From positions 186,001-250,000 of the IMG/VR virus record IMGVR_UViG_3300044796_000662: a stretch of 64,000 nt of DNA, one strand, 5' to 3'. Both the position numbers and the translations under genes were made by a program. Below, piece by piece: positions 22,250-50,564 of the stretch (within the stretch, counting starts at the first letter, position 1; every line of letters starts with the position of its first letter). The notes under the pieces were generated by a model. It had not been told where the DNA came from. It ran no database searches and saw only the letters and a list, made by a program, of their open reading frames with translations.

Positions 22250-23143
22250 TCATTCCTTCGATTTGGGTTTGGATTTCGGGAGCTGCCACTTCTGAATCGT
22301 CCGTAGAACGGCCGCCACGTGCTTGCAGACGCGGTTCTGACCCTCAGGGTCCCGAATGACGGGCTCAGAGGCCGTTCCGCGGGGCTTGCCGTTGATGTAC
22401 CCCTCGCCCTTCGACCAGTGCTCCGGACCGAGCCACCGCCAGGCTGGGCACGAGCAGGCGAGGTGCAGGTCCATCTTCGTGACCTTCACGGCCTTGCCGC
22501 GCTCCGCCATGAGCTTGACGGCTCGGGGTCCGTTGCCGCAGTTCACGGCGAAGATCCAGCGCATGTTCGGGATGTCAGCGCGCTTGAGGTCCACGCTGCA
22601 CGAGTGCGAACGCTCGATGAACTTGGGGTTCAACCCCTCCTCGATGGCGTCCATCCGGGTTGCCACTCGGATGCCATGGCCGGTCTCTGCGGGAACAACC
22701 AGCTCGTGAGCTGTTCGGAGCAGATGAGCTTCGACCACATAAGCGACTGAGGCGTAGTGCTTGTGCTTCCGGTCATCACGGTAGGGGTAGTCCGTGACCG
22801 TGGGGTCGCCTTTCGGACGGCCGCCAGGACCCGTGTACGTGGGCTTGAAGTCCTCGTGATGCGGCCGATCCCCCTCGGGGTCATCCTGGGGCTTGGCCAG
22901 GTCGTCCGGACCGTCCTTGCGGTAGATGGACCCCGGCTCGGCCTTGTCGAACTCCCGGATGTCACCCTCAGGCTTGTTGAAGGTGCTCGTGCCCGGGATG
23001 TCCTTGTCCAGCGAGCGCCCCTTGTCAGAGGGACCGCCGCCTGGAAGACCCGACTCCGCCACGGACGGGGGCATCCGCTTCTGACCGTAGGCTGGTCGAG
23101 AAACGAGAGGCTGCGTCAACGTAGCGGAGCGGTCCTCTCCCAT
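22250..23143 (-). CDS. SWIM-type zinc-finger protein with disordered N-terminus
   Basis: ACSCPAWRW...RVCKHVAAVL (CxC...CxH). Confidence 0.75.
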   Translation of the reverse strand: MGEDRSATLTQPLVSRPAYGQKRMPPSVAESGLPGGGPSDKGRSLDKDIPGTSTFNKPEGDIREFDKAEPGSIYRKDGPDDLAKPQDDPEGDRPHHEDFKPTYTGPGGRPKGDPTVTDYPYRDDRKHKHYASVAYVVEAHLLRTAHELVVPAETGHGIRVATRMDAIEEGLNPKFIERSHSCSVDLKRADIPNMRWIFAVNCGNGPRAVKLMAERGKAVKVTKMDLHLACSCPAWRWLGPEHWSKGEGYINGKPRGTASEPVIRDPEGQNRVCKHVAAVLRTIQKWQLPKSKPKSKE

Positions 23144-23146
23144 ACG

Positions 23147-24196
23147 TCACTTGTGCTGGTTCTTGACGACGTCCTTGTTCTTCTCCCAGTGATCCGCCGC
23201 CTCTTCGAGCTGCGCGTCCGTCATGGCAGGGTTCGCGTCCTTGAAACCCTTCATGACGTCCTCACGGGACGAAGCCTGCTGGTAGATGGCCGCCGCCACC
23301 TGAGCGCCGACTTGCTGCATCTGCTGCTGCGACTGTTGCTGCATCGGCTGGATCTGGTCCGCGATGACGTTGCGGAGCATGTTCGCGAGCGCGAGACGGC
23401 TCGGAGCCTTGCCCTCTTGGGGGTTGAGCAGGCCGGCAGCGACCTCACGAAAAACCGCAGCGGCCTTTGCTGCCGGAACCGAGGCGCGCTTGGTGTTGCC
23501 TTCGAGGGCGCCAAGCAGGGCCACGACGCGGTTCATCGGAACCTTGCCCGTACCTTCGGTCTGCGCCGCGAGGGCGAGGAACTGTTCAGCAGCTTGCTTC
23601 GGAGTCATCATCGGAGTGCCCTTTCCAGTTGAAATAGGGGTGTCACCCCCAGCGGTTTTCGCAGCACCAACATCGGTGCCCTCACTCATGTCCTTCGGCT
23701 CGCCCTCGACGAGGCGGCGAACCCCCACGGTCGGCTCCGTGCCGGCCCACTCCGAAGAGCGGCGCTTCAAATAGCGAAGGCGAACGTCCTGGAGCGCATC
23801 CTCCAGCTCGTCCGCCTTCTCCGGCTTGAGCGTGTCCTTGATCTCTTCGTAGTCGAGACGGGCGGCAGCGAGCGCGGATGCGTCGAGCGCCTTCTCCATC
23901 TTGAAGAGGGCATCGGGGATGCCGTGGATCAGGTGGGCGGCAACCTCGAAGAAGTGGTCCCGTTGAGGGGACTTCTCGATGAGATCGGTCGCCTCCTTGA
24001 CGTACTTCTTGAGCTGGGCGCAGCGCAAACGCGCATCCCCCAACTCCTCCAAGAGGTAGACCGTGATTCCGGCCGCGACCTTGTCAGCGGCGGCCTTGTC
24101 CACCCCGTGGGCGACGAGGTACGAGGCAAGACGGGCAGGCAACGTGGTGCTGCCTGCCGCTGTCTTGTTCATGCAACGCTCGATGTCGTAGGGCAC
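23147..24196 (-). CDS. Hypothetical helical protein (putative internal head protein)
   Basis: SD GGGAGAGG and TTATC upstream; several K-x-A motifs. Confidence 0.65.
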   Translation of the reverse strand: MPYDIERCMNKTAAGSTTLPARLASYLVAHGVDKAAADKVAAGITVYLLEELGDARLRCAQLKKYVKEATDLIEKSPQRDHFFEVAAHLIHGIPDALFKMEKALDASALAAARLDYEEIKDTLKPEKADELEDALQDVRLRYLKRRSSEWAGTEPTVGVRRLVEGEPKDMSEGTDVGAAKTAGGDTPISTGKGTPMMTPKQAAEQFLALAAQTEGTGKVPMNRVVALLGALEGNTKRASVPAAKAAAVFREVAAGLLNPQEGKAPSRLALANMLRNVIADQIQPMQQQSQQQMQQVGAQVAAAIYQQASSREDVMKGFKDANPAMTDAQLEEAADHWEKNKDVVKNQHK

Positions 24197-24239
24197 CGCA
24201 GACCTCTCCCGTTCACGGAGAGGGAGCTGATAAGGTGTT

Positions 24240-25520: not shown

Positions 25521-25522
25521 AT

Positions 25523-25560
25523 CTGCTCCTACGGGACGAAGAGGTCCCCGTATGGAGCAG
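25523..25560 (-). promoter_or_regulatory. Hairpin occluding the SD of gene 24240-25520
   Basis: CTGCTCCATACGGGGAC-CTCTTC-GTCCCGTAGGAGCAG; AGGAG lies in the 3' arm. Confidence 0.5.
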
Positions 25561-25575
25561 TCAAAAAGTAGATCC

Positions 25576-26025: not shown

Positions 26026-26034
26026 GGCCCTCTT

Positions 26035-26042
26035 CTACACCG
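26035..26042 (-). promoter_or_regulatory. CGGTGTAG candidate promoter element
   Basis: 9 nt before ATG 26025. Confidence 0.65.
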
Positions 26043-26049
26043 GGTCCGT

Positions 26050-28133: not shown

Positions 28134-29015
28134 TTAGAAGCGTGTGACAACGAGGCGGGTCAACCCACGTGGGTTGAAGGCACCGATGCCCACATTTTCA
28201 AAGCACGAGAAGCCGATGGTGCGGGCCTTGGGGTCGTCGGCGCTGAGAACCGTCAGCTCCGTACGGACGGGGAAGCGTCCGAAGTTTTCCGGCTCGGCGC
28301 ACACGTAGACGAAGCCCACGGGCACGAGGCGGGAGATGATGATCTGAGCGCCCCAGAGGACCGCTTGCAGACCCGTCTTGAGCAGCGTCGCCTGGCTCTC
28401 GATGTCCAGGATGTCGCGGCCGAACTTGCGGATGTCCGCGTAGTCAACCGCGTTCATGTAGATACGGGCAACCCGGAGGTCGTTCCGCTCCACCTCTGCG
28501 AACGCGTCAGCGAGGACGCTCGGGCTGATCGGAGCAACCACCGACACGTCGGGGTTGGTCTGACCGGGGAGGGTGTCGAAGCCCGAGACAGCGATGCTGT
28601 CCAGAACCGCGAACACGCGCTCGTCCTCGGCGGCCTGAATCTGCGCCTTCGCGAGATCCTGGGCGCGCTCGATCAGGTCGAAGCGACGCTCCTTGATCTG
28701 CGTGAGCGGGATTTCCGGGTTCGAGGCGACCTCGAACAGCGGGAAGATCACGCGGCGCGGCTTCTGGATCGCGAGGATGTTCTCGCCTTCCTCGCCGACG
28801 ACGAAGGCCGTGACTTCCGGGTCCTTGTCGTAGATGGGGAGAGCGCCGTCAGGAAGCTGCTCGACCAGGAAGGTCTTGCGGCCGACTGCGGTGTAGTCGC
28901 GACGCAGCCGAAGCGGCTGGATCATCGACGCGGCCAGCTTGGAGCGACCGGCAGCGGTCTTGATGTACTCCGAGATGATCGCCTGCTTGGTCTCGTTGGA
29001 AACGGTGGGCATCAT
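28134..29015 (-). CDS. Major capsid protein (HK97 fold)
   Basis: E-loop LPIYDKDPEVTAFVVGEEGE, FDLIERAQDLAKAQIQAAEDERVF helix, LWGAQIIISRLVP, FENVGIG..NPRG; follows protease-scaffold-decoration genes; strong terminator; highly biased codons. Confidence 0.88.
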   Translation of the reverse strand: MMPTVSNETKQAIISEYIKTAAGRSKLAASMIQPLRLRRDYTAVGRKTFLVEQLPDGALPIYDKDPEVTAFVVGEEGENILAIQKPRRVIFPLFEVASNPEIPLTQIKERRFDLIERAQDLAKAQIQAAEDERVFAVLDSIAVSGFDTLPGQTNPDVSVVAPISPSVLADAFAEVERNDLRVARIYMNAVDYADIRKFGRDILDIESQATLLKTGLQAVLWGAQIIISRLVPVGFVYVCAEPENFGRFPVRTELTVLSADDPKARTIGFSCFENVGIGAFNPRGLTRLVVTRF

Positions 29016-29791: not shown

Positions 29792-31153
29792 TCACTTGAT
29801 GCCGAAGTGCTCGCGGACGTCGGGAGCCGACGACCAGAGGTTCGACAGCTTGTCGATGTCCGAGGAGGCCGTCTTCACTGCCGGGGCGCTGGCGCCACCG
29901 ACCTTGGAGACACCCTGCGAGGGACGCGTGCCGACCGTGCGAGCGGCGGGCTGTGCGACCATGGATGCCTGCTTCTCCTGGCCCTGGCTCATCTGCTGAG
30001 CCTTCTCGGCGTCCTGCGACTCCTGAGTGGCGAAGAGCGTCTTGAGGACGTCGTCATCCGGTCCGAGCTGAACCTCGCCCATGTCCATGGTCGGGGGTTC
30101 GAGTTCGATGTCGCCGATGCCGGGACCCATGTCACCACCGGGGGCGGGGGCGAGCATCTGGTCGAGGAGGGCGTCATCGCCCGCCTGCACCTGGATCTGC
30201 TCCTGCTCCTGGATGGGGGCCTGCTCCTGTTGCTGGCCCTGACCCTGTTGCTGCATGAGGGCCTGGATTTGTTGCTGGACGGCTTGCTGCACCATCTGCT
30301 GCATCGACTGTTGGTCCATGCCCGCTTGTTGGACCTGGTCCTGTTGCTGCGCGACGGGTGCCGGCGCTGCCGCTTGCTGTTGCTGCGGCTGACCACCCTG
30401 GCCCTGGCCGCCCTGCTCCTGACCCTGGTCCTGAGCCTTCTTGCTCGCGACCGGGTTGTTCTTGCCCCACTGGCCGCCGGGGAAGTCGGCCTGCGAGCCC
30501 TGTTGCTGCTTCATGGCCTCTTGGACCATCTGCTGCACGGCGCCCATCATGGCCTGTTGGTCACCTTGCTGCATGGCCTGCATGCACTGCTCGGCAGCCG
30601 ACTGGTAGCTCGACGCTTGCTGTTGCTGGTCCTGCGCCTGAGCGACGGGAGCCGGCGCGGCAGCCTGTTGCTGCTGCGGCTGGCCCTGTCCACCCTGGCC
30701 CTGACCCTGCTCCTGATCCTGAGCGAGACGCTGGAAGGTCTCGATGAGGTCAGCGTCGGGGAGCGCCATGAGCGAGACCGCCTGGTCCTCGACCACGTTC
30801 TCGGCGACCTTGGGGCCGAGCATCTGGCGAGCGACCTTCACGCAGAGGTCGGCCTTCTTGACGAGAAGCTGCGTAGAGGCAGCCTTCGCAAGCTCCGGGT
30901 GGTTGAAGGTCTCGGGGCGGAAGTCGGCAAGACCGACCTCGTCGCGCTTGGTAGCGCCGCCCGAGTATTCCTTCTCCCACTCGTTGGGGGAGTGGACGTC
31001 CTCAGCCCAGCTCGACGGAGTACCGTTCATGTACTTGTCGGCGCGGGGGTTCTGGGACACGTGGTCCTGGTTCATGAGATAGGGGTCAGCGGTCTTGCCC
31101 ATGGCAGCCGTCCGCTGGATCTCGTTCCGGTTCCAAGTGGTGCGTTCACGCAT
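29792..31153 (-). CDS. Gln-rich scaffolding/core protein
   Basis: Between protease and decoration/MCP; low complexity; ATG 31153 has GGAG SD. Confidence 0.65.
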   Translation of the reverse strand: MRERTTWNRNEIQRTAAMGKTADPYLMNQDHVSQNPRADKYMNGTPSSWAEDVHSPNEWEKEYSGGATKRDEVGLADFRPETFNHPELAKAASTQLLVKKADLCVKVARQMLGPKVAENVVEDQAVSLMALPDADLIETFQRLAQDQEQGQGQGGQGQPQQQQAAAPAPVAQAQDQQQQASSYQSAAEQCMQAMQQGDQQAMMGAVQQMVQEAMKQQQGSQADFPGGQWGKNNPVASKKAQDQGQEQGGQGQGGQPQQQQAAAPAPVAQQQDQVQQAGMDQQSMQQMVQQAVQQQIQALMQQQGQGQQQEQAPIQEQEQIQVQAGDDALLDQMLAPAPGGDMGPGIGDIELEPPTMDMGEVQLGPDDDVLKTLFATQESQDAEKAQQMSQGQEKQASMVAQPAARTVGTRPSQGVSKVGGASAPAVKTASSDIDKLSNLWSSAPDVREHFGIK

Positions 31154-31199
31154 GGGAGGCTCCAACCTTTTCTCGAACACTCAGGGTTTATAGATAGAT

Positions 31200-32711
31200 T
31201 CACGACCCCAAAGCGAAGAGGCGGCCCTTGTCGATCAGGGCAGACGCTTCATCTGGGCTGAGGTCACGGCCCACGAACTGACGGCAAGCCGCCAAATACG
31301 ATGCGATGTCGTTGTACGCGCCCATCCCGTTAACCGCCAAAACAGCGCGGTAAATGCGGGATTCTCCCGCCATAGAGGAGCGCTTCATCATGTCCATCAT
31401 CCGAGATACGGCGAGAAGCTCACGCCCAGAGAAGCTGCCGGTCTTCACCAGCGAACTCCACCCGCCGCTCTTGTACAGCACAAGTCCCAAAAGGATTTTC
31501 TTGGCTGCCTTTGGATTCTTCACAGTCGCGATCACACCACGAGCGATTCCATTCCACTCGGGGGTCTTGAGCGCGGACTTGATGATGGACTCGTTCTCGC
31601 GGTTCTCGTTGAGGTCAGCGGCGTTGCCGGACTCACTCTTCGAGATCTCACTGCGGACCTTCTTGATGGCCTCTTCGCGCACCGCGTCCGCGAGATCTTC
31701 AATCGCCTTTTGAATGGGCGTCTTCTCGCTCTTGCCGGCGTCAGCCTTGGGGGTCTCTTCCTTGGGGTCGTCCATCCCAAAGTCCTGCGCGAGGATCTTG
31801 CGAACCGCGGGCGGGATAGCGACCTTGAGCTGACCCTGGCTGCGAGCTGCCTTCTGGATTCCAACACCCGGCTGCGCGACGCGAGCGGGCTGCGAGAAGG
31901 CCACCTGCATCTTGCCGTTGATGTTCTCGATGTCCTCGGCAGAGAGGATGTTGCGGAGCACCGCGCCCGTGAAGGCGGGGTTGGCTACCCAGCTCGCCTC
32001 GATGAAGCGAACGGAGCCCGGCTCCTCATCCACGTGACCGCACAGCTCGGCGACCTTGCGCTTCTTGCCGAACGAATCGTAGAAGTCCGAGCCCTTGAAG
32101 TATTTGACGTGGGGGCAGAGCTGCGTCTCGTCGTAGGCGACGTTGCCGCACTTGGTGCAGAGCGTGAAGCCGACCTGGCAGCCCATCGAAAGCGTCGAGA
32201 GCTGGCCGCTGGAGATGGCCTCGATGAGGGGCTTGTGCTTCCGATCCGTCGCGACGAGGATGTCCACGTAGATCGAGTCACCGATGTCACGCGCAGCGCT
32301 GTCGATGATCTTGCCCTTCGACAGCTCGGGGATCTGGATGTGCTCGACGTAGTTCTCTCCGCCCGTGAAGGTGCGGAACGACGAGAGCAGGAGCTTCTTC
32401 TCCCAGCAGTCGTTGTTGTTGTTGATGTACTTGAGTGTGTTGGGGGTGACCTGCCAGTCGGCGAACTTGCGCTCGATCTGGAAGCCGTCCACGACCATAC
32501 GGCCAAGCGGCTGATCAACCTTCTCGGTCTCGACCGAGGCGATGATCGTGCAGTGCGAGAGGAGGTAGCGCTTCGGGTCGTACTTCTCCAGAACGACCTT
32601 GGCGGCGTTGCGGCTGTTGAACCCCGTGGCCTTCGCGCACACCGCGTCCCATCCAGCGAAGGTGATCGCGGGCTTGACGAGATTGGCGTTTGCGTACTTG
32701 TTGAAGGCCAT
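31200..32711 (-). CDS. Prohead maturation protease (HK97/assemblin-type Ser protease with Zn insert)
   Basis: NNNNDCW, YVEH (His), KGKIIDS, LSMGC (Ser), CTKC...CPH insert, FIEASWVANPAFTGA. Confidence 0.8.
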   Translation of the reverse strand: MAFNKYANANLVKPAITFAGWDAVCAKATGFNSRNAAKVVLEKYDPKRYLLSHCTIIASVETEKVDQPLGRMVVDGFQIERKFADWQVTPNTLKYINNNNDCWEKKLLLSSFRTFTGGENYVEHIQIPELSKGKIIDSAARDIGDSIYVDILVATDRKHKPLIEAISSGQLSTLSMGCQVGFTLCTKCGNVAYDETQLCPHVKYFKGSDFYDSFGKKRKVAELCGHVDEEPGSVRFIEASWVANPAFTGAVLRNILSAEDIENINGKMQVAFSQPARVAQPGVGIQKAARSQGQLKVAIPPAVRKILAQDFGMDDPKEETPKADAGKSEKTPIQKAIEDLADAVREEAIKKVRSEISKSESGNAADLNENRENESIIKSALKTPEWNGIARGVIATVKNPKAAKKILLGLVLYKSGGWSSLVKTGSFSGRELLAVSRMMDMMKRSSMAGESRIYRAVLAVNGMGAYNDIASYLAACRQFVGRDLSPDEASALIDKGRLFALGS

Positions 32712-33029: not shown

Positions 33030-33641
33030 TCAGGTCCAGCCCATCTTCTTGAAGATCTTGCCGAGGGCGTCGTTGCCGTCTTGGACGGCCTTGTACGCTG
33101 CCTCGTAGTGCTTCTGCACCTCTTGGATCTCCGGGTGGAGTTCCTTGAGGTGGGCGTACTTGCGCAGAGTGATGTTGATCTCCTGAAGCGCCGTGAAGGC
33201 GTTCCACATCACCTTGCTCTGCATGCCGTAGAGCACGTTGGTTGCGGCACGAGCTTCCTCGCTCGCGGGTTCCTTACCCTCGGCGGCGAACCGACTGGCG
33301 ACTCGCTCTGCGATCGTCTTCTTGCTAGCTTCGCGGTCGTGCCAACCGGGCTTGATCTTGTACCCGAGAGAGGACATGTACTCGTCGTCCATGATCTTGG
33401 CGTGTGGGATCGCCAGAACACGGCGGCCTGGACCAAGCGAGCCGTCCTTCTTGACGGGGTAGTAGTAGTGCTCGTCAGGGAAGTCGTACTTGAGCCCCAC
33501 ATTCTTGTGAGGGAACTGGCTGACGGCCCTTCGCTGGTCTGTCGAGGACAGATCCTTGAACGCAACATAGGCATTCGCTCGGGCGTCACCCAGCAGCTTT
33601 GCCTCGTGAGGGCTCATGAAAGCAGAGTCCCAGTTCTTCAT
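33030..33641 (-). CDS. Hypothetical protein (putative internal head protein)
   Basis: TGATG-coupled start; AERVASRF motif. Confidence 0.7.
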   Translation of the reverse strand: MKNWDSAFMSPHEAKLLGDARANAYVAFKDLSSTDQRRAVSQFPHKNVGLKYDFPDEHYYYPVKKDGSLGPGRRVLAIPHAKIMDDEYMSSLGYKIKPGWHDREASKKTIAERVASRFAAEGKEPASEEARAATNVLYGMQSKVMWNAFTALQEINITLRKYAHLKELHPEIQEVQKHYEAAYKAVQDGNDALGKIFKKMGWT

Positions 33642-34375
33642 CACCACTCCACCGGCTCCCCGTCAGGACCAACCAGGTCAGACTGCTTGAGGAGGAAGAG
33701 GTCCTTCGGGCAAGCGAACAGACGAGCGCGAGCGCCCTTGTCCATCTTGTAGGTCGTCTTGCGCATCGCGGTGCCGCACTTGGGGCACGCCGGCTTGCGA
33801 GTGTCGAGGTCACCCGACGTTGCACGGTACTGACGGTTGGACGCAGCCCAGTACGCCGCCGTCTTCGCCGTCTTGTAGACGTGCTGTGTGATCCGGAGAT
33901 CCGCGAGGTTGTTCGCGACGAGGTAGAACTTCTGCACCTCGTCACGAACCGCCATGTCCTGCGCGCCCTGCGAGGCGTAGCGCCTCCACAGCTCGTCGTA
34001 GGCAAGCACCTCACTGGCACCCTTGGCCCAGAGAAACGCCATGTCCTGGTGGAAGCCTCGCGGCAACTCGGTCGTCTTCCAGAGCTTCTGCCCTGCCACC
34101 TTGCGGTCCTGGATGACGTCCTCGGACACGTACGTCTGATCGAGCGTCGGAGGGAACCAGCCCTGGATGCGCGAATCGACGCGGATCACGTCGTCGGGGA
34201 AGACGCGCTCGTTGCCGTACGGGAACTGCACATCAATGACCCCAAGACCACGATGGACGGCAGTCACGCGGCCCAGGAACGGGGAGAGGCCGAAACCGCC
34301 CATCCCTGGCCAGTACCGCATGACTGAGTCGCCGGTCTTGAAATCCCGGGTGAGCTTCCAGTAGTCGATCGCCAC
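33641..34375 (-). CDS. SH3-like plus zinc-ribbon protein
   Basis: FKTGDSV...GRVTAV...IDVQF; CPKC...ACPKD. Confidence 0.65.
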   Translation of the reverse strand: MAIDYWKLTRDFKTGDSVMRYWPGMGGFGLSPFLGRVTAVHRGLGVIDVQFPYGNERVFPDDVIRVDSRIQGWFPPTLDQTYVSEDVIQDRKVAGQKLWKTTELPRGFHQDMAFLWAKGASEVLAYDELWRRYASQGAQDMAVRDEVQKFYLVANNLADLRITQHVYKTAKTAAYWAASNRQYRATSGDLDTRKPACPKCGTAMRKTTYKMDKGARARLFACPKDLFLLKQSDLVGPDGEPVEW

Positions 34376-34801: not shown

Positions 34802-34832
34802 GGTGCGTTCTCTCCGTGCGGTCTGAGGTGGC

Positions 34833-37800: not shown

Positions 37801-38876
37801 GCCTTCGGCTCGGAGAGCTTGAGGGCGTTCATGAAGTCGCCAACGGTCTTGACGTTCTTCGGGAAGATGCCCCGCAGATGCTTGGCGATCTCCTCGCCGG
37901 GGCTCATCTTCTGGCGCAGACGTGCGAACGAAGCAGGGTCCGCCGAGTCGAACTGGTGAATGAACGTCCCCACGGCGGGGTCGTTCTTGGCCATCTCGCG
38001 AAGCTGCTTGCCGGACTCGGCGAGTTCGCCTTCCTTGGTCGGCTCAAGAGGGGGGCCGCCTGTCGGACCCTCACCCTTCGGCGCCTCTGCCGGCTTGCCC
38101 TCACCCTTCGCGGGTTCCGGCTTTTCGTTCTTCGGCTCGGCCTCGTCCTCTTCCTTCCAGCGCGCCTTGAGCTTCTCCTCGACCTTGTCAAGCTGCTTGG
38201 TCGCATTGATGGCCTGACGAAGGTCACCCATGGTCTTGAACGGCTTGAAGGCAGGATTCTTCTCGGTGTCGATGAGGGCCTTCGGCATCCGATCGAGCGG
38301 GATCTCGTTGCCCCACCCACGCAGCTCGCTCTTCGGGTCGATGAGCGACTTCGTGAAGGACTGGAGCGCCAGGTCGTCGTCGATGGCGTCCTTCAAGCCG
38401 TGAAGCGCCTGGAGCTTCTGCTCCTCCTTCTTGCGCTTCTCGTGCTTGGGCTCCCCCGACTCGGGCTTCTTGGCACCGGGCTCCCCAGGCTTCTCGACCT
38501 TGGGCTCTTCAGGCGCACCCCCCGCATCCTCCTCGCCTTCCTTCACGGGCTCGTAGTCGCGCCCGTTCTCGCTCTGGAGGAAGTCCTTCGTGACCTCGCG
38601 GGTCTGCCCCGTCTCCCGGTGACGGACCTTGACCTTCGGAGACTCCTCGGCCCACCGAGTGAAGGCCCGGCCGAGCACACGGGCCACTATCGAGGCGGCA
38701 GCGGCGTCCTTGTCGTGCTTCTCAGGCTCGTCGTCCACTTCGATCCGCTCACGCCGCAAGTCTTTGCGCGGCGGCTTGACCTTGGGCGAGGGACGAATGA
38801 GACGCTCGGTCTCTTCCGTCTCCCGCTCGAAGTGGTCCTTTGTTGAGCGGATCTCCACGCTCAGCCCACGCCACAA
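34833..38876 (-). CDS. Large charged protein downstream of portal (putative internal head/core protein)
   Basis: 1347-aa ORF, K/E/P-rich, internal repeats; start may be GTG 38858. Confidence 0.75.
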   Translation of the reverse strand: MWRGLSVEIRSTKDHFERETEETERLIRPSPKVKPPRKDLRRERIEVDDEPEKHDKDAAAASIVARVLGRAFTRWAEESPKVKVRHRETGQTREVTKDFLQSENGRDYEPVKEGEEDAGGAPEEPKVEKPGEPGAKKPESGEPKHEKRKKEEQKLQALHGLKDAIDDDLALQSFTKSLIDPKSELRGWGNEIPLDRMPKALIDTEKNPAFKPFKTMGDLRQAINATKQLDKVEEKLKARWKEEDEAEPKNEKPEPAKGEGKPAEAPKGEGPTGGPPLEPTKEGELAESGKQLREMAKNDPAVGTFIHQFDSADPASFARLRQKMSPGEEIAKHLRGIFPKNVKTVGDFMNALKLSEPKAEPKKEEGKPPAAEAKPARPPVPRPTPKAPPQAAPGQAPAGQAPGAKPGAPPAAKPPVPRPTPKTQPMPTQPMPAAKEQPAPAGKPSEEQLAEGLKTIAEPPPEEKPKGKKKDEKSERPKVKPSEEEAATAEFIKGQKHKTPEFQDWADEDSSTVRDDSGEMLYPDEKKKKHVPFESLPPRAQADWVERFQRSKAINENLKGLREKAVTNPELSRTLKDLANPHSDLRERLKEQGGRLEYQSIKKSIPELRDADLPPGVKTVGDLLAAAAEMHHLPPQPSRREVTPEEQDKAKRQIIETMPADVAERLLESDPPLHPDDVRDLVETHSMAMGEKSGDSLIKAVEGHYETDPEKVRPPAKGLNRYGEEVPFEKLSEGEKADAMQKHRMFVLGMSLAAREKQVDKLRKKTNAPDELLGHIADFMLRKHPNETPEDRDARATTMAKHVFKDAVERGLMEDDADKYARWQRKREMLIEQHTQEARDRGEEYDESEDKALPKRPAPKEISEKQIGKLLDQLKDDPAAQRLAVGYAQANDYLRAQKEFLSHDSPSAISEHESPGAIVKGLKRIDEFFDKADKRYPKEMRGQIPAKQNFRNRVLDKIRTLAPEKYPFVNSYIKEKEYDEYEDKLKKWGDDYDKAVKKHKDRVSDPYRQGEGVPADLPQPPPRPAGYGQARGEPGDVKDARKQLYDRLKDQDSALKTASTLARVVARVSGVSTCKPHWAMGDSLSIRVAERAKAAVYWGVEPYPKDKAVNTPYVPWTQVHQRDLGEKDFDSLVKAAREWLKTPVLSTAMNGIYRETQVRAALELAIRDHENGRYSVGLQPPIYNMLLARLTGESDPYALLPDRSNIKGPITVDTGAKMASESLYHSTAGEGHPMKPSAIIRQFASKYASSNPVVAYDLVDLSMKVAEQEQQEESQGQQQKQAQLPPEFLEHQKGKKEDGEKKDEQGQGQQKDASYTQLRSAVIKMAAANPHLREAYRPLLETIKKLG

Positions 38877-38888: not shown

Positions 38889-40745
38889 TTACCCGCCGCC
38901 GAAGCGGTCGTTGGCGGCGTTGGGCTCTTCCTTGATCTTGAGGCCCAGGTAGTCGGTGATCTTGTCGGACAGGTCGGACTTCTCGGCAAGCGTCTGGCCG
39001 AGCGCCGAGTAAGCCGCACGGCTCATTTCGTTGAAGAGCGCGTCGTTGACCGTCCAGAGGTCGCGCTTGATCTTCGTCGCCGTGTCGTCCGGATCGATGT
39101 TGAACATCTCCAGGATGAGGTCGATCGAGATCGAGCCCTTCTGGTACAGGTTGTAGAGCGCGTCGAACGTGTCCTGGCTGTCGCGCAGCGGCAGACGCGT
39201 GAAGGAGAGCTTGGGGTAGAGGACGACTTCCTCGCCCCACTTGTCCTTCTCGACGAAGCCCTTGCGACGCGCAACCGGCTTGAACAGGTACTCCTCGACG
39301 TACTCCTGAAGGATCTCCCGAAGGAAGAGGTAGCGCTGGTTGATGACTTCGAGCTTGAGGCGGTCGCCCGAGTAGAGCGTTTCGCCAGAGAGCAGCGACT
39401 CAGTCACGCCAAGACCAGTGCGCAGACGGCGCTCGGTCTGCTCGTACTCCGTCGAGAGATCGAGAAGGCGGTCCTTGCTGCCCATCTCCTCCCAGTGGAC
39501 CTCGTAGTTGGCTACGATGGAGTAGTCGGGATCGACAAGCGACAGGTCCACCTGCTCACGGAGGTCGTCGGCGTCCGTGTCCGAGATGTCCTCAGCCCAC
39601 ACGATACGCTTGGGGGTCATCGCGCGGCTGGCGATCTGTGTCTGCGCCTGGCGAAGCTTCTCGCGGTAGTACAGGGTCCGGAGGCACCGATCGAGGATGC
39701 TCTGCCCAAGCTCCTCGCCGGCCTGCTTACGGCCCGAAAGCATGTAGACGAACGAACCCTCATCGGGGTCCGTGCCAAGCGGGATGAGGCGTCCAGAGCC
39801 GATGAACTCCCGGACTTCCTCGGGCATCTCAGCGGCCATCTCGGCGGCCACGGGATCGCCCATGTTCGCCTGCTCGATGAGCGCGCGGTCACGGTCCGAG
39901 GGGATCAGCTCGACGCGGATCTTGTCGGTGAAGCTGAAGGTGCTGATCTGCACCTGGTCGATCGGGAAGATGATGAGCCGGTCCCACCCCTTGTAGTTCT
40001 TGCGGTAGTGCTCCAGCTCTTCTTCTTCGCGGTTGTCCTTCTCCGTGTAGCCCTTCTCTTGCTGCTCGATCGTTTCGCCGTCCTCGGTCACAACCGAGCG
40101 GGTGACGACCTGCTCCTTGTACCCAACCTCGGGCGGGATGGGGACTTCGCTGTCCTCCGCGAAGATCGCTGTAGTTCCATCCAACCAGAGGTGGTGGACG
40201 CCCATGACGAGCTTCTGGAACAGCTTGAGGCGCTTCTCCATCTTCTGGAAGAAGCTCAGGATGTACCGACCGTAGTCCTCGGGGTCGTCGAACCCCTTGG
40301 GGCACGTACGAGGCTTGGGGGCCGCGAGGCGAACCTTGGAAAGGGGCAACTCCGTGTGCAGGTCGATCGACTGCGCGACGATCTCGTCGGTGTTGTAAAA
40401 GTGCCGATAGATCTCGCGCTTCTCGCGGATCGACTGCGGCAGTTCAAGGAAGTCCGTCGAGAGCTGCGGGGAGAAGAACGAGCTGGTCCCCGACATCATC
40501 GTGTCGGCGCTGCCTACCGGATCGATGCCGTAGGCCGCGATCTTCGTGCGGTTCGACTGGATGCCGAATGGATCGGTCTTCTGCTGGAACAGCTTCGCCA
40601 GACGGCGAGCCTCACGCTCACGCTCCGTGAGCGGCGCCATCTTGCTACCCTGAGGCCCAGCCGCGTAATGCTTCGTCTTGACAGACGGGGGCATCGGCGC
40701 CGAGTTGGCACGTACGTTCGAGACGTTCGTGAACTTAACGGGCAC
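38889..40745 (-). CDS. Portal protein
   Basis: YRHFYNTDEIVAQSIDLH, GQSILDRCLRTLYYREKLRQAQ..IA.R..TP.R; between terminase and protease. Confidence 0.8.
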   Translation of the reverse strand: MPVKFTNVSNVRANSAPMPPSVKTKHYAAGPQGSKMAPLTEREREARRLAKLFQQKTDPFGIQSNRTKIAAYGIDPVGSADTMMSGTSSFFSPQLSTDFLELPQSIREKREIYRHFYNTDEIVAQSIDLHTELPLSKVRLAAPKPRTCPKGFDDPEDYGRYILSFFQKMEKRLKLFQKLVMGVHHLWLDGTTAIFAEDSEVPIPPEVGYKEQVVTRSVVTEDGETIEQQEKGYTEKDNREEEELEHYRKNYKGWDRLIIFPIDQVQISTFSFTDKIRVELIPSDRDRALIEQANMGDPVAAEMAAEMPEEVREFIGSGRLIPLGTDPDEGSFVYMLSGRKQAGEELGQSILDRCLRTLYYREKLRQAQTQIASRAMTPKRIVWAEDISDTDADDLREQVDLSLVDPDYSIVANYEVHWEEMGSKDRLLDLSTEYEQTERRLRTGLGVTESLLSGETLYSGDRLKLEVINQRYLFLREILQEYVEEYLFKPVARRKGFVEKDKWGEEVVLYPKLSFTRLPLRDSQDTFDALYNLYQKGSISIDLILEMFNIDPDDTATKIKRDLWTVNDALFNEMSRAAYSALGQTLAEKSDLSDKITDYLGLKIKEEPNAANDRFGGG

Positions 40746-45132: not shown

Positions 45133-45813
45133 TCACCGGACCAGTTCTGCTGCGTTCTCCTCCCACCCTTCCATCGACGTGGACAGGCGGTTGAAAAGCA
45201 GGTCGATCTGTTCCGGACGCATCCCGATCTCCACGCACATCTCACGGAAGTGACCGATGAGGAGACCGAACACCTTCTGGAACTTCTCGGATTTCAGGTT
45301 GATCACGTCCGCACCCATCTTCTTGATCTCCAGCTCGATGCCGGCGATCTTCGTGAGGGCGTCGATACGACGTGTGGACACCTGGGCTGTGTCCTTGCCC
45401 AGCTTCTCGTTCTCGATTCGCTGGAAGTGCAGCGCCGCCGCCTCTTTGGCGACTTCGTGCTTGATGATGCGGAGCATGTCTACGGCGTCAGAACGGGCTC
45501 CGATAGCCTTGACGACCGGGTCACTCTCGATGAACCCGACCTTCTCCTCGGTCATCGCCTGGTGGTATTCCAGGTCCGTCTGGTTGGGCTTGCGCGTGAT
45601 CTGACGAGGACGTCCCACGCGCCGGGTGATGTTGGGGCCACCGGCTGCATGCACAGGGAGCAAGGTGATGAGCTTGGCGGTGCGCTGGCGGTCATCCACC
45701 GGCTCATCGGTCTCCTCGATCTCCTCGGCCCCAAGCAACGAGGCTTCCTCGACCTCCGATGCCTCGTCCCCCTCAACTACGTCGTTGCGCTGTCCCTTGT
45801 TGTTCTCGCTCAT
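45133..45813 (-). CDS. Putative terminase small subunit
   Basis: Directly upstream of terL; helical; VGRPR motif; positional inference. Confidence 0.45.
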   Translation of the reverse strand: MSENNKGQRNDVVEGDEASEVEEASLLGAEEIEETDEPVDDRQRTAKLITLLPVHAAGGPNITRRVGRPRQITRKPNQTDLEYHQAMTEEKVGFIESDPVVKAIGARSDAVDMLRIIKHEVAKEAAALHFQRIENEKLGKDTAQVSTRRIDALTKIAGIELEIKKMGADVINLKSEKFQKVFGLLIGHFREMCVEIGMRPEQIDLLFNRLSTSMEGWEENAAELVR

Positions 45814-46190
45814 GACTTCTTGCCTGCGGGTTTGCCGTCCCCGCCTCCTTGGGTCCGAATCAAGAACTGCGACAGGTTGTAGACCGTGTCGTAGCCCTTA
45901 TCTCTCGGGACTCCCTTGTCGATTGCGTGCTGTAGATCCTTGCCCGTCTCGACGTAGTTCAATACCCCAGCGTTATTGGGGGTCAGATTGAACACGTCAG
46001 CCGGCTGGATGTCTCGGCGGTTGATGATGGGGTGATCCATCATGTACTCGCCGTTTTCCTTGACGATCTCCTTGGAGATGCCCTTCGGGGCGTTGACGGG
46101 CTTCGTCAGACGCTTGGCGTGCTGACGCCCGCCTGGGGCTTGATCGGCCAGGCGTCGCTGAAACCTCGCCGCGACGCGAAGAGCGATCAT
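45810..46190 (-). CDS. Hypothetical protein (N-terminal RVAARF motif)
   Basis: ATGA-coupled ORF. Confidence 0.65.
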   Translation of the reverse strand: MIALRVAARFQRRLADQAPGGRQHAKRLTKPVNAPKGISKEIVKENGEYMMDHPIINRRDIQPADVFNLTPNNAGVLNYVETGKDLQHAIDKGVPRDKGYDTVYNLSQFLIRTQGGGDGKPAGKKS

Positions 46191-46432: not shown

Positions 46433-46433
46433 G

Positions 46434-48437
46434 TCAGACCTTCACCTTCGCGCGGCCCATGACGATCTCGAACGAGGTGGCGGGCTTGGCCTCGTCAACC
46501 TCGACCGTCATGCCGCCGTTCTGGAGCTGGTACTCGGCGACCATCGAGAGCCCCGTGCCCTGCATCAGGCTGGGGAGGTTGGTCTCCGTGGCAGCGCCAG
46601 AGTTGAGCATCGCGTGCTGTTGCGCGGTCTTGTCCACGTACGGCGGCTCGTGGACGAGCGCCTTGCCGAGCTTCGAGCACGTGTTGTTCACGTTGTGGAC
46701 GCAACCCGTGCACTTGGGACCGATCTTGGCGTACTTGACCTGCTTGGACTTGTAGAGGCGCGAGACCTCTTCGCAGCCAGCGCCGTAGTCGGAGTACGGG
46801 GCCGGATCGATGTAGTAGATGCCTTGGAGACCCTGCTCGGCGAAGACCGCCTTGAGTTCCCCACGGGCAGCCTGGATCTCCTCAGCGGAGAAGGCCAGAC
46901 GCATCGTACGCACGAGATCCTCACCGTAGAGTCCCTCGTTGAGGTACTTGCGGGCGGCCGCGACGATCGGACGAACGACCGGCCTCTGAGGTTCACGGGC
47001 AGGTGCCCCGTGGAAGGCCCGGACGATGTCCAGACGACCCGATGCTTGGACGGGGGGCGCCTCACGCGCGACAGACTGGTAGATGCCCTTGAGCTGCTCG
47101 CGAGGAGTGTTGCCCCACGAAGAAGCAACCCTGCCATCGACCGGAGGCAAGCGGCCGGCGGTGCGAAGCTCCAGGATGACAGCGTTGACGGTCTGCGGCG
47201 TGTACAGGTCGCTCGCCTCGCGAATGAGGGGCTTGCCGTACAGCATGCAGCGGCCGATCTTGTTGTAGATGCACGACTCGCACTTCGAGCCCGTGACGAT
47301 GCCACGGATGCCGAGGTTGTGCTTCGCCACGAAGTCCGCGCCCTCGTGGCAGTCGTCGAACGAGTCCTGCGTCGAGTAGACTCGACCATAGAGACCCGCC
47401 TCACGGAAGTGTGGCTCCCAGACCGAACGCGTCCTCGCCAGGTCGTCCATCGAGAACCGAACTCGAAGGGACTCGCCGACTTCAGCGGACGTACGACCCT
47501 TGAGCATCTCGCGACGGATGAAGGCGACGATCGGCGTGGCCTTGTGGTCCAGCGCCATCTTCTCGTCGCGCTTGCGCGTCAAGTTGCTGGCCGCCACGAG
47601 CTGGTCACTGAGGCCCTCGGTCGAACCGCCAACAGGCTTGGGGAACTGGTTCTCGCCCACGCCACGATAGACGGCCTCACGCTTCGGAGTCTCCGCGAGC
47701 ACCGCCAGACGGATGCGCTCCTTGGGGGCTGCCGTTGAAGCCTGGATGACCTTGCCCTGCATCCGCTGGAGCTGCTCGACCTCGGCGGCGAGCTGCTCCG
47801 TGTACGGCACGTTGAGGACGACTTCCTTGTGGAAGACGGCGCAGTTGGTGGTGCTGCCGATCTTCTTCGCATGGATGCAGTTGTTGCACTGCGGCTTCGC
47901 GACGATGTACTTCGCATCAGACGCGTGCCGGCGCACGAAGAGCTGCGGCGTCTTGGGCGAGTTATGGCAGCTTGGGAAGTCCGAAGCCACGATGTAGACG
48001 CGCCCGAGAAGACCCCGCTCCTGGAGAGCCTGAGCGATGACGTCGCGGTTCGCTTGAAGCGTCTGTGCGTCGAACTTGGCGGTGAGCGTCCGACGAAGGG
48101 CGTTCAAGTCCGAAGACTGGATGAGGGCGTAGCGCGTGACCTTGGCCACGTCTTCGGCCTTCGCACGCAGGGGGCCATGCGCCATGGACAGGTCGCCCAT
48201 GGTGTGGACTTCACCCGCGCCGGGGAACGGCTTGACCGGCCCCGTGTTCGGGACGAGGTGGTTCGTCGAGGGGTCGTCCTCGTGAGCCCAGAGCGCCTGG
48301 AGGTCCGGTGCGATGTCCAAGTTCTGCTTGGGCAGCACGGACTCCTTCTGGTACTCCTTCTCGTCAACGTCGAGCCAATCGAGGTTGGCGACGCTGCCCT
48401 CCTTCAGGAAGTTGCTGAGGTCACCTAGATCAGCCAT
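46434..48437 (-). CDS. Protein with three Cys4 repeat domains
   Basis: 3x ExGLxGxxY...C...CxxC...C. Confidence 0.75.
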   Translation of the reverse strand: MADLGDLSNFLKEGSVANLDWLDVDEKEYQKESVLPKQNLDIAPDLQALWAHEDDPSTNHLVPNTGPVKPFPGAGEVHTMGDLSMAHGPLRAKAEDVAKVTRYALIQSSDLNALRRTLTAKFDAQTLQANRDVIAQALQERGLLGRVYIVASDFPSCHNSPKTPQLFVRRHASDAKYIVAKPQCNNCIHAKKIGSTTNCAVFHKEVVLNVPYTEQLAAEVEQLQRMQGKVIQASTAAPKERIRLAVLAETPKREAVYRGVGENQFPKPVGGSTEGLSDQLVAASNLTRKRDEKMALDHKATPIVAFIRREMLKGRTSAEVGESLRVRFSMDDLARTRSVWEPHFREAGLYGRVYSTQDSFDDCHEGADFVAKHNLGIRGIVTGSKCESCIYNKIGRCMLYGKPLIREASDLYTPQTVNAVILELRTAGRLPPVDGRVASSWGNTPREQLKGIYQSVAREAPPVQASGRLDIVRAFHGAPAREPQRPVVRPIVAAARKYLNEGLYGEDLVRTMRLAFSAEEIQAARGELKAVFAEQGLQGIYYIDPAPYSDYGAGCEEVSRLYKSKQVKYAKIGPKCTGCVHNVNNTCSKLGKALVHEPPYVDKTAQQHAMLNSGAATETNLPSLMQGTGLSMVAEYQLQNGGMTVEVDEAKPATSFEIVMGRAKVKV

Positions 48438-50178
48438 CGATCTCTCCGTTGGGCTTTGCGTAGGGCCCTTCGTTATCCCGCTGGCTCATCCAGTCAGGCC
48501 GCATGTTGTGGGTAGAGTCGTCCCACTTCGTGTAAGGCTCATCCATCTGCTCGTAGCGGTAAGCCGAACCTGGTTGCATGTCCTTGTCGAACTCGGTGGT
48601 TGCGGACCCACCATCGCCAGGGAGCTGCGTCGTAGCGAACTCGAACTCGCCGAAGTGGGACGGGCGAGGAATCAGCGGGCGAGGCGGAGAGGGCGGGCTG
48701 CTCTGCGGCAACTCGCTCTCAGCGACCCCTGAAAGCACCGGGTTCTCTGTCGGACCCTTGATGGTGTCGATGTCGTTGTCCTTCGGACCCGTGTAATAGT
48801 CCGAGCGGGCGACTCCCTGTTGCTCATCCCCAGGTAGGCTGGTCAGCGCGGGCGGGCCAACGAAAGTTCCGAGGATAGCTTGCAGTCGCTCTCGGGCCAT
48901 CTTGACCGACTTGTTGATGCTTTTCTCGACCGCGGGCGTCGAGTCGGGGTTCTCGTTGTCGTGAACCTTGCCGCCCGGGTCGTTGGGCAGACCGGACTCG
49001 GGGCCATAGACGCCCTTGTCGCCCATGCTGGGGCTCGACTGACCGTAGCCGCCCGCGCCCTGGCCGTGCGCATCGTTGCCGTTCCCTCGGCCGATGCCGA
49101 AGTCGTAGCCCTCAGTGCGTGTGTCGAAGCTCGTGTTCGAGTCGGGCATCGCGGACGTGCCGACAGGTGCCTGCTGCGGGGCAGCGTTGCGGCCGCCGTC
49201 GTACTGGTAGGCAGGCTGGCTTCCGTAATCCTGGCTCATGGGCTCGCCGCTGACGCCCTCATCCTTGCCCCAAGGGTCTTTCGGAAGGCCCGGCTCGCGC
49301 TGGTTGACCGCGCCGCCCCAGCCCGTTTGATCCGTGTCTGCGCGATCGAGGTGCTTGACGCGAGGGCCGCCGAGAGAATCGGGGTTCACCGAAGAGTTGG
49401 CGAGGATGTCGAAGACGATCTGAGCGGCCATGCGCTCGACCGGCGAACGGTAGTCGTAGCTCGACTGCTTGTGGTTCTTGTTCTGAGCCGGCGGCTTGGC
49501 CTTCTGCACGGTCTCAGCATCACCACCATCGGGCAGGTCGGAGGCAGGCTTGCCTTCCTCCTCGCCTTCCATCTGCTTGACCCACGAGGTGCTGGGCTTG
49601 CCCTTCTTCTCGACCTCGGCCTCGTCGTCCTCGATGTCTTCTTCGGGGTTGTCGAGGATCGATTCGGACTCGCCAATGAGGCGCTCGATGCTGACGAAGT
49701 CTTCCTTGGTCAGCTCGCCGAGCTTGGGCTTCCAGTGCGGGGCGTTGACCTCGTCGTGAATCGTGTCGGAGACAGCGGACAGTGCCTCGCAAGCGTCATA
49801 GAGGCGCTGGCGAAGGTCCGTGACCTTCATGATGTACCCACGGCCGCCGACCATACCGTCCGGAGAGACGGTGCTCGACTTGACGCGGTTGAAGAGGCGG
49901 TACGCTTGAAGTGCGTGCCCGAGGCTCACGCTCATCGCCCACAGCATCTTGGCGAGAGGCTTGAGCGCCTTGGGGTCGTACTTGTGGTCCGAGGGGATCT
50001 GGCGGTTCGCCGGTCCGTTGGGGCCTTCGATGGGCATTCCATCCGCACCGGGAGGCATCATCTGCCCCGGCTGCGCTCCGCCCTTGGGCGGCGGGGGCGG
50101 CGGTCCCTTAGCCACGCGGACGCCATCGGCCTTGGCAAGGGCCGCTCGAACGTGAGTGCGGAAGTCCTTGTCGCCCAT
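48430..50178 (-). CDS. Hypothetical protein, helical N-domain plus long disordered G/P/D-rich tail
   Basis: Long ORF in head gene block. Confidence 0.75.
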   Translation of the reverse strand: MGDKDFRTHVRAALAKADGVRVAKGPPPPPPKGGAQPGQMMPPGADGMPIEGPNGPANRQIPSDHKYDPKALKPLAKMLWAMSVSLGHALQAYRLFNRVKSSTVSPDGMVGGRGYIMKVTDLRQRLYDACEALSAVSDTIHDEVNAPHWKPKLGELTKEDFVSIERLIGESESILDNPEEDIEDDEAEVEKKGKPSTSWVKQMEGEEEGKPASDLPDGGDAETVQKAKPPAQNKNHKQSSYDYRSPVERMAAQIVFDILANSSVNPDSLGGPRVKHLDRADTDQTGWGGAVNQREPGLPKDPWGKDEGVSGEPMSQDYGSQPAYQYDGGRNAAPQQAPVGTSAMPDSNTSFDTRTEGYDFGIGRGNGNDAHGQGAGGYGQSSPSMGDKGVYGPESGLPNDPGGKVHDNENPDSTPAVEKSINKSVKMARERLQAILGTFVGPPALTSLPGDEQQGVARSDYYTGPKDNDIDTIKGPTENPVLSGVAESELPQSSPPSPPRPLIPRPSHFGEFEFATTQLPGDGGSATTEFDKDMQPGSAYRYEQMDEPYTKWDDSTHNMRPDWMSQRDNEGPYAKPNGEIDG

Positions 50179-50180
50179 GA

Positions 50181-50564
50181 TCAACCCTTGAGGGGCTCCC
50201 CGTTGTCGTCGAACAGGCGCTCGATGAAGAAGTCCCCGCCCTCGCGCTTGAGCGTCCAGAGATCCCTCTGGCTCTTGTGGATGAGCGTCTCGTTCGAGAC
50301 ACGCACGAAGTTCGACAGGTCACCGAGCGAAGCGACCTTCTTGCGGCCGGTTTTGTGGGCCGAGACGATGTGGGGTTCACGCTGGAAGAGCGCGTCGATA
50401 CCCGTGGCCTCCGAGCCCTGGATTTCCCCCAGCTCGAAGTTGGGCTTCGAACCGACCTCGATCTTCGTGAGGATGGAGCCCTTCGTGAAAGGGCCACTCT
50501 CGCTCGCGCCCGACAGGAAACCGTCGATGTCAGCACCGTTGCTCAGGTCTTCGATCTTCGCCAT
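50181..50564 (-). CDS. Hypothetical head-region protein
   Basis: TLIHKSQRDLW...IERLFDDNGEPLK C-terminal domain after KKVAS. Confidence 0.7.
   Translation of the reverse strand: MAKIEDLSNGADIDGFLSGASESGPFTKGSILTKIEVGSKPNFELGEIQGSEATGIDALFQREPHIVSAHKTGRKKVASLGDLSNFVRVSNETLIHKSQRDLWTLKREGGDFFIERLFDDNGEPLKG

What the first reader, a model, noticed from the sequence alone, without database searches (positions are those of the whole stretch)
22250..50564. Recurring [K/R]-x-A(-S/A) and RVAxR[F/W] motif in head-block proteins: candidate protease/encapsidation code
Seen: IRVATR (22250 gene); NKTAA, DKVAA, AKTAG (23147); IKTAA (MCP); RTAA, KTAD, KKAQ, KQAS, KTAS (scaffold); NKYAN, QKAA (protease); MKVAS (32715); ERVASRF (33030); RKVAG, KTAKTAA (33641); PKFAA (34403); KTAS..RVVARV, IRVAER, KMAS, KQAQ (34833); TKIAA (portal); LRVAARF (45810); GRVAS (46434); VRVAK (48430); KKVAS (50181). 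Many fall at boundaries between disordered and folded segments. Known: T4 and phiKZ prohead proteases process many head proteins at short motifs ending in Glu. Inference: an analogous Ala-specific system lets many cargo proteins be loaded and matured as polyproteins.
Basis: partly seen in the sequence, partly recalled or inferred. Interest (0 to 1): 0.7.

Follow-up and report, generated by a model that had tools for sequence, protein, structure and literature searches.

The report
Head-protein cleavage/targeting motif in jumbo phage

Summary
The window is part of a 363-kb jumbo-phage record. The motif [K/R]-x-A-[S/A] is genuinely over-represented in the head block: 42 observed against about 17 expected (z about 6.5), even with 15-residue local shuffles. 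Fourteen permuted or related control patterns stay below z 2.7, and there is no excess outside the block.

The excess recurs in non-redundant orthologue families from about 120 related contigs (2.2-fold; controls 0.7-1.4). There x is mostly T, Q, V or L. It recurs again in two distant isolates, Tunturiibacter phage Tunturi_5 and Bacillus phage G (5- to 8-fold for [KR][TQV]A[SA]).

Sites form conserved islands in variable segments. They flank the protease's catalytic domain, cluster in the last 70 residues of the scaffold, and are missing from terminase and tail proteins. The protease has the T4 gp21 / herpesvirus assemblin fold.

RVAxR[F/Y] is a distinct element. It is an N-terminal tag on about 12 proteins scattered over the genome and in relatives. 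Internal copies usually follow a [KR]-x-A site.

Best reading (about 0.55): an Ala-type prohead-protease code, herpes-like in A-S, combined with a T4-CTS-like tag. No cleavage has been shown. This is a new variant of a known kind.

The parts
31200..32711 (-). Prohead (capsid maturation) protease, 503 aa: catalytic domain, disordered linker, C-terminal helical domain
   Evidence: phrog_18299 'head maturation protease' 1.8e-9 and phrog_2774 1.7e-22. AF2 model: residues 43-254 match T4 gp21 with Z 10.2 and herpesvirus proteases with Z 7-9.
31950..32585 (-). Protease catalytic domain (aa 43-254). Invariant H124 (nt 32340-32342), invariant S175 in LSMGC (nt 32187-32189), and a conserved four-Cys insert
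   Evidence: 21-sequence alignment A1; coordinates checked.
32601..32612 (-). RNAA (aa 34-37): [KR]-x-A site just N-terminal of the catalytic domain
   Evidence: Kept as [KR]-x-A in nearly all orthologues, as KTAA@33 in Tunturi_5 gp331 and KTAA@43 in phage G gp19. Low-pLDDT segment.
31845..31856 (-). QKAA (aa 286-289): hydrophobic-x-[KR]-A-A island in the linker after the catalytic domain; candidate self-release site
   Evidence: A288 and A289 are invariant among 21 orthologues while the flanks vary and are gapped. pLDDT below 50 at 274-302. Tunturi_5 has KVAS@265/287; phage G has KVAS@248 and KIAS@274/300.
29792..31180 (-). Scaffold-like protein, 462 aa (named by gene position; no family match), with RTAA@23, KAAS@99, KQAS@403, KTAS@436
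   Evidence: 4 sites against 0.75 expected. Gene lies between protease and MCP. About 70 orthologue C-termini were compared.
29864..29875 (-). KTAS (aa 436-439), 24-26 residues from the scaffold C-terminus, in front of the conserved tail LS.LW.SAPDV..F
   Evidence: Orthologues carry KQA[SAG], RTAS and KTAS/KLAS within the last 70 residues, the last one at shifting positions.
29963..29974 (-). KQAS (aa 403-406) in the scaffold, at the place where most orthologues have KQA[SAG]-x-RTAS before TRTVGTRP
28134..29015 (-). Major capsid protein, 293 aa, with KTAA@19 (nt 28950-28961) and KLAA@26 (nt 28929-28940)
   Evidence: Pfam Phage_capsid 5.6e-5, just under the cut-off. 91-100% identical in 80 of 531 related contigs. 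Motifs kept in Tunturi_5 but not in phage G, so these two sites are ambiguous.
34833..38876 (-). 1347-aa protein next to the portal (candidate internal/ejection precursor), with KDAA@56 and a C-terminal cluster KTAS@1056, KMAS@1217, KYAS@1246, KDAS@1311, KMAA@1324
   Evidence: The Tunturi_5 protein annotated 'DNA ejection protein' (gp328), two genes before that phage's protease, has 11 sites; its homology to this protein was not tested.
35673..35711 (-). Composite KTAS-TLA-RVVARV (aa 1056-1068): [KR]TA site followed by an internal tag
   Evidence: Orthologues keep KTA/RTA ... RVA.R across an indel-rich region.
33288..33335 (-). REAS-KKTIAE-RVASRF (aa 105-120 of ORF 33030-33647): site plus internal tag
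46161..46190 (-). N-terminal tag MIALRVAARF of the 126-aa protein 45810-46190
   Evidence: Conserved at the N-terminus of 14 orthologues (A2).
49423..49470 (-). KQSS...ERMAA (aa 239-254 of ORF 48430-50184). Orthologues have KQAS (71% of sequences) in very variable flanks, followed by [ED]R[IV]A.R[FY]
   Evidence: Flank conservation 0.17 against 0.81 for the motif.
50328..50339 (-). KVAS (aa 76-79 of ORF 50181-50564), a conserved R.[KR]VAS island
33854..33865 (-). KTAA (aa 171-174 of ORF 33641-34375), conserved K.AAYW
   Evidence: Family ratio 5.3.
40533..40544 (-). KIAA (aa 68-71) in the portal N-terminal region, ahead of the part shared with distant portals (from about aa 77)
   Evidence: The phage G portal has KQAA@18 and KMAS@55.
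23147..24196 (-). 349-aa protein with the highest motif load in the genome (7 against 1.5 expected), including the conserved KRAS@236 (nt 23480-23491)
22655..22672 (-). IRVATR (aa 158-163 of ORF 22250-23143), conserved as [KR]VA[AST]R in orthologues
47121..47132 (-). RVAS (aa 436-439 of ORF 46434-48437). Orthologues have [KR]TA[SA]-SWG here, and the family ratio is 3.0

Best explanation
The head proteins of this jumbo phage carry two linked short linear signals. The first is the core [K/R]-[T/Q/V/L]-A-[S/A]. I infer it is the recognition and cleavage site of the phage's own prohead serine protease (ORF 31200-32711, T4 gp21 / herpesvirus assemblin fold). By analogy with assemblin, the cut would fall after the Ala. 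Under this reading the protease would free its catalytic domain from its N-terminal leader and its C-terminal helical domain. It would clip the conserved C-terminal tail off the scaffold and cut the scaffold into pieces. It would also trim the portal N-terminus and process the proteins encoded between portal and protease and upstream of terminase. The second signal, R-V-A-x-R-[F/Y] about 4-18 residues from the N-terminus, marks roughly a dozen otherwise unrelated proteins encoded all over the genome. I infer it is a capsid-targeting (cargo-loading) tag like the T4 CTS. In large precursors the same tag lies just downstream of a [KR]-x-A site, so cleavage would release modules that each begin with a tag. 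What is shown: the motifs, their head-protein specificity, their conservation and turnover, their positions, and the protease fold. What is inferred: that the protease cuts there, where the bond lies, and that tagged proteins are packaged.
For: Enrichment and specificity:
- The head block has 42 sites against about 17 expected (z about 6.5), and this survives 15-residue local shuffles. No excess appears outside the block, and 14 controls are flat.
- Out-of-sample, 26 non-redundant orthologue families give 2.23-fold against 0.70-1.41 for 16 controls, and 10 conserved aligned sites against 0-4.
- At position x, T is 7.6-fold, Q 5.7-fold and V 3.3-fold enriched.
- In distant isolates with deposited gene calls, [KR][TQV]A[SA] is 11 against 2.2 in Tunturi_5 and 9 against 1.1 in phage G. 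The sites lie in the protease, the portal, the scaffold-position gene and the 'DNA ejection protein'. They are almost absent from about 4,800 aa of tail and adjacent structural proteins (one site) and from terminase.

Site context:
- Sites are conserved islands in variable, gapped flanks.
- 656 instances fall on 264 distinct alignment columns, which indicates turnover.
- The protease catalytic domain is bracketed by sites throughout the clade. The downstream one is invariant and lies in a low-confidence linker.
- The scaffold carries 1-3 sites in its last 70 residues in about 70 orthologues.
- The protease fold matches T4 gp21 (Z 10.2) and herpes proteases (Z 7-9), whose R and M sites have Ala at P1.

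The tag:
- 14-16 hits against 2.5 expected, about 12 of them N-terminal. Codons vary synonymously.
- N-terminal copies exist in relatives, with in-frame stops only 8-19 codons upstream.
- 15 of 29 internal copies have [KR].A within 14 residues upstream, against a 7.5% background.
- [KR][TQVL]A[SA] is itself biased to the first 25 residues: 21 of 70 against 6 expected.
Against: - There is no proteomic or biochemical evidence of cleavage in this phage or any relative; no cleavage data turned up, and the one phage G paper likely to report MCP termini is not held.
- The scissile bond is unknown.
- The MCP sites lie in a conserved N-arm segment and are lost in phage G, so at least some instances may be structural.
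- N-terminal tags are not followed by a consistent downstream site, so the tag need not be removed.
- The invariant protease-linker island is K-A-A followed by R, F or Y, which fits only the loose [KR]-x-A form.
- The RVAxR[FY] tag is not enriched in Tunturi_5 or phage G.
- Three tagged genes sit next to a phage clpX gene, which suggests another possible reader of the tag.
- Complex prediction gave no answer.
Confidence: 0.55

Rival explanations
1. Both motifs are docking signals only. They would be short peptides that bind the scaffold, the protease's C-terminal domain or the inner capsid surface, as encapsulin cargo-loading peptides or scaffold-coat contacts do. They would recruit proteins into the procapsid without being cut.
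For: RVAxR[FY] carries more information than a typical cleavage site, and its spacing fits one face of a helix. N-terminal tags lack a consistent downstream site. The MCP copies lie in a conserved structural segment.
Against: Docking alone does not explain why sites bracket the protease's own catalytic domain, or why several occur per scaffold at shifting positions. It also does not explain why T, Q and V are preferred at x in what look like disordered segments. No binding partner was found.
Confidence: 0.2
2. The N-terminal RVAxR[FY] tag is a recognition signal for the phage-encoded ClpX-like unfoldase (G000 88778-90061), used for remodelling or timed degradation, and is unrelated to capsid loading.
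For: A ClpX homologue is present: zf-C4_ClpX 4.3e-11 and AAA_2 2.3e-20. Three tandem tagged genes lie directly downstream of it, and this arrangement recurs in G001 and G002. From my own knowledge, ClpX is known to read N-terminal motifs.
Against: Most tagged genes are elsewhere in the genome. Internal tags occur inside head-block proteins and follow [KR]-x-A sites. G004 and phage G have ClpX but no excess of the tag. No ClpP gene is present in this record, which is 76% complete.
Confidence: 0.1
3. The motif is a by-product of composition or secondary structure in Ala/Lys-rich helical head proteins and has no recognition function.
For: Head and scaffold proteins are Ala- and Lys-rich. Genome-wide there is a mild 1.37-fold excess. 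No exact 3-mer passes Bonferroni on its own.
Against: The excess survives 15-residue local shuffles, and 14-16 patterns of the same composition are flat. It holds in AT-rich phage G. Beta-branched T and V are preferred at x. Sites are conserved while their flanks are not. There is an N-terminal positional bias.
Confidence: 0.07
4. The sites are read by a host enzyme (a host protease or a modifying enzyme) rather than by the phage protease.
For: Precedent, from my own knowledge: staphylococcal phage 80-alpha capsid and scaffold proteins are trimmed by a host protease.
Against: The motif is shared by phages of very different hosts (Acidobacteriota and Bacillota) that share this protease family. 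The sites bracket the phage protease's own catalytic domain.
Confidence: 0.05

Closest known systems
Herpesvirus assemblin and its R (release) and M (maturational) sites
   Same: Same protease fold (Z 7-9). The likely site has Ala followed by Ser/Ala, like YLQA-T/S and VQA-S (PMC4498786). One site lies between the catalytic domain and a C-terminal non-catalytic domain. Another lies about 25 residues from the scaffold C-terminus, ahead of a conserved tail.
   Different: P3 is basic (K/R) rather than hydrophobic. The scaffold is a separate gene, not nested in the protease gene, and the two C-termini differ. The protease carries a four-Cys insert. Many more proteins bear sites. No cleavage has been demonstrated.
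T4 gp21 / phiKZ gp175 / SPN3US gp245 prohead proteases with L/I-x-E or A-x-E motifs
   Same: Best structural match is T4 gp21 (Z 10.2). A short three-position motif recurs in many head, portal, scaffold and ejection proteins and around the protease itself, as for SPN3US with 14 sites in 9 substrates and a C-terminal self-cleavage (PMC10052503).
   Different: The conserved residue is Ala, not Glu, with a basic residue two positions before it. There is no detectable sequence similarity to gp21 (hhalign probability 0.3).
T4 capsid targeting sequence (CTS) of internal proteins
   Same: A roughly 10-residue N-terminal peptide shared by unrelated proteins encoded at scattered loci. The tag itself (RVA-A/S) fits the putative protease motif, as the T4 CTS ends in its protease site.
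   Different: The sequence is different. Copies also occur internally after [KR]-x-A sites. Packaging of the tagged proteins is untested. The tag is restricted to a sub-clade and is absent from Tunturi_5 and phage G.
Encapsulin cargo-loading peptides
   Same: A short conserved peptide on diverse cargo proteins of an HK97-fold shell.
   Different: Encapsulin peptides are usually C-terminal and unrelated in sequence, and no protease is involved.

Membership tests
Prohead serine protease of the assemblin / T4 gp21 / HK97 gp4 fold | Characteristic fold of the catalytic domain | tested here: met
   AF2 model residues 43-254 (pLDDT about 80) match 5jbl with Z 10.2 and herpes proteases with Z 7-9.1. 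Foldseek's top hits are the same proteins.
Prohead serine protease of the assemblin / T4 gp21 / HK97 gp4 fold | Conserved His and Ser about 50 residues apart as the catalytic pair | tested here: inconclusive
   H124 and S175 (LSMGC) are invariant in 21 orthologues. Residue-level superposition on the gp21 catalytic residues was not obtained, and hhalign against gp21 was not significant.
Prohead serine protease of the assemblin / T4 gp21 / HK97 gp4 fold | Gene located in the head module between portal and scaffold/MCP; family-level sequence match | tested here: met
   Gene order is portal 38889-40745 ... protease ... scaffold ... MCP. phrog_18299 gives 1.8e-9.
Prohead-protease cleavage-motif systems (T4, phiKZ, SPN3US) | Short motif recurrent in head proteins but not in non-head proteins | tested here: met
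Prohead-protease cleavage-motif systems (T4, phiKZ, SPN3US) | Glu at P1 | tested here: not met
   The conserved position is Ala. [DE]-containing control patterns are not enriched.
Prohead-protease cleavage-motif systems (T4, phiKZ, SPN3US) | Mature protein termini begin right after the motif | not testable with these tools
   No peptide-level virion proteomics was available.
Herpesvirus assemblin R/M-site arrangement | Site between the catalytic domain and a C-terminal domain, and a site near the scaffold C-terminus | tested here: met
   Invariant [KR]-A-A island at aa 287-289 in a low-confidence linker. KTAS at 436 of 462, and RTAS/KTAS/KLAS within the last 70 residues of about 70 orthologues. 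This is sequence evidence only.
Herpesvirus assemblin R/M-site arrangement | Protease and scaffold are nested in-frame genes sharing a C-terminus | tested here: not met
   They are separate adjacent ORFs (31200-32711 and 29792-31180) with different C-terminal sequences.
T4-type capsid targeting sequence | Shared short N-terminal peptide on several unrelated proteins | tested here: met
   About 12 proteins in G000, with N-terminal copies in relatives G001-G003 and G005 and in LR745208.1. Codons vary synonymously.
T4-type capsid targeting sequence | Tag is necessary and sufficient for packaging into the head and is removed by the protease | not testable with these tools
   Complex prediction gave no answer. 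The functions of the tagged proteins are mostly unknown.
ClpX N-terminal recognition signals | Phage or host ClpX present; the signal is at the N-terminus of substrates | tested here: inconclusive
   A ClpX homologue is present and lies next to 3 of about 12 tagged genes. No ClpP gene was found.

The most novel reading that the evidence does not exclude
A widespread clade of soil jumbo phages, including relatives of phage G, uses a sequence-readable head code: a herpesvirus-like Ala-Ser/Ala protease site with a basic P3, plus a new N-terminal cargo tag, R-V-A-x-R-[F/Y]. The tag would address a dozen enzymes and unknown proteins to the capsid interior for injection, and the internal head proteome could then be predicted from sequence alone. 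Large precursors would be polyproteins cut into tagged modules.
Probability: 0.35. Interest if true: 0.8.

Novelty: new variant of a known kind. Interest (0 to 1): 0.62.

Why it matters
Proteolytic maturation of giant phage heads is known in detail only for T4 and the phiKZ/SPN3US group, all of which cut after Glu. A second specificity, Ala-type with a basic P3, in a protease of the same fold would link phage and herpesvirus maturation more closely. It would give a sequence rule for predicting which proteins of uncultivated jumbo phages are head-internal or ejected. The MCP family alone has over 500 relatives in IMG/VR. It would also offer a candidate tag for loading foreign proteins into large capsids. 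Two cultured relatives, Tunturi_5 and phage G, carry the core motif, so the central claim can be tested directly with virion mass spectrometry.

Tried and rejected
- Megablast of the head block against isolated phages found no match.
- Pfam on ten head proteins gave nothing above the cut-offs.
- A profile search of the protease against PDB sequences found nothing, and hhalign against T4 gp21 was not significant. The fold had to be shown through a model.
- Complex prediction with protease 40-503 and the tagged 126-aa protein returned 'no answer' (score 0.00, partner pLDDT about 31). This is not evidence either way.
- The search for related loci with ORF 24240-25520 returned only a near-identical contig.
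- A full-text search for RVAARF and variants found no paper. No cleavage-site data were found for Tunturi_5 or phage G, and the phage G capsid paper is not held.
- Function searches on tagged proteins were uninformative: one cysteine-dioxygenase-like protein where the 'tag' lies inside the fold and may be chance, one weak GNAT lead, the rest unknown.
- A Shine-Dalgarno check of tag-proximal start codons was uninformative because this phage shows few SD motifs. N-terminal placement rests on in-frame stops close upstream.
- A search for gene fission exactly at KTAS in the 1347-aa protein's orthologues found separate C-terminal-module genes in some relatives, but the break is not at the site.
- Rejected ideas: a Tat signal (no twin Arg, no hydrophobic region); a kinase site (Ala alternates with Ser); a DNA- or RNA-level motif (synonymous codons vary).

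Full report
Context. The window is bases 186001-250000 of a 362,937-bp IMG/VR virus record with 62.6% G+C. All real genes in the window lie on the minus strand, judged by third-position G+C. PHROG profiles identify the large terminase (43105-45129), the portal (38889-40745) and a head maturation protease (31200-32711, residues 95-266). ORF 28134-29015 is the major capsid protein. It gives Pfam Phage_capsid at 5.6e-5, just under the cut-off, and is 91-100% identical in the best 80 of 531 related IMG/VR stretches. The nearest deposited phages are an uncultured 485-kb genome (LR745208.1), Tunturiibacter phage Tunturi_5 (309 kb, a myovirus of Acidobacteriota) and Bacillus phage G. The protease family also occurs in large actinophages.

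Noticed in passing
G000:C1:88778-90061 (outside the window; locus L181:8778-10061) and the genes at 86699-88754: The phage encodes a ClpX homologue (zf-C4_ClpX plus AAA_2). Three tandem genes directly downstream each start with the RVAAR[FY] tag. The same clpX-then-tagged-gene order occurs in relatives G001 and G002. No ClpP gene was found in this 76%-complete record.
   Followed up: partly
G000:C1:176928-180278, 281914-282213 and 314187-314543, with a weaker copy at 109887-111146 (all outside the window): There is a third N-terminal signature, M-x(1-3)-[ST]YDRRTA[AS], on three otherwise unrelated proteins (1116, 99 and 118 aa). It ends in the core motif.
   Followed up: no
window 31200-32711, residues C185, C188, C199, C224: The prohead protease carries a conserved four-cysteine insert (CTKCGN ... 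C ... AELCGH) inside the catalytic domain. It looks like a zinc ribbon and does not appear in the short list of structural matches.
   Followed up: no
window 28134-29015 and loci L047-L126: The MCP is 91-100% identical across the best 80 of 531 related IMG/VR stretches, while the adjacent scaffold, protease and portal fall to 30-65% identity. This is unusually strong constraint on the capsid protein of a very abundant soil phage clade.
   Followed up: no
window 29056-29682: The 208-aa protein encoded just before the MCP, in the position of phage G's decoration protein gp26, is almost free of the motif: about 1 instance in 71 non-redundant orthologues against about 16 expected. This could be avoidance of the motif.
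   Followed up: partly
window 6907-15228: A 2773-aa protein has strong internal repeats: LPP 64 times against 6 expected, and GYGQ, AGYG, QAAQ and PTDY each 10-18 times. It is probably a repetitive tail or fibre protein.
   Followed up: no
window 34403-34969: The listed ORF overlaps the 3' end of ORF 34833-38876. Orthologues begin at the equivalent of M58 (MPKFAA...), so the true start is probably about nt 34798, which puts the KFAA motif at residues 3-6.
   Followed up: partly
window 1755-2534: A protein outside the head block with a weak ferritin-like/DUF5856 match ends in RVAS-KSV-KTAS-DWKIK. It has the second-highest motif excess in the genome (4 against 0.5).
   Followed up: no
whole record G000: IMG/VR labels the record 'provirus', yet G+C is uniform (0.61-0.64) over all 363 kb, and three close relatives are complete genomes with direct terminal repeats. 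The label may be wrong.
   Followed up: no
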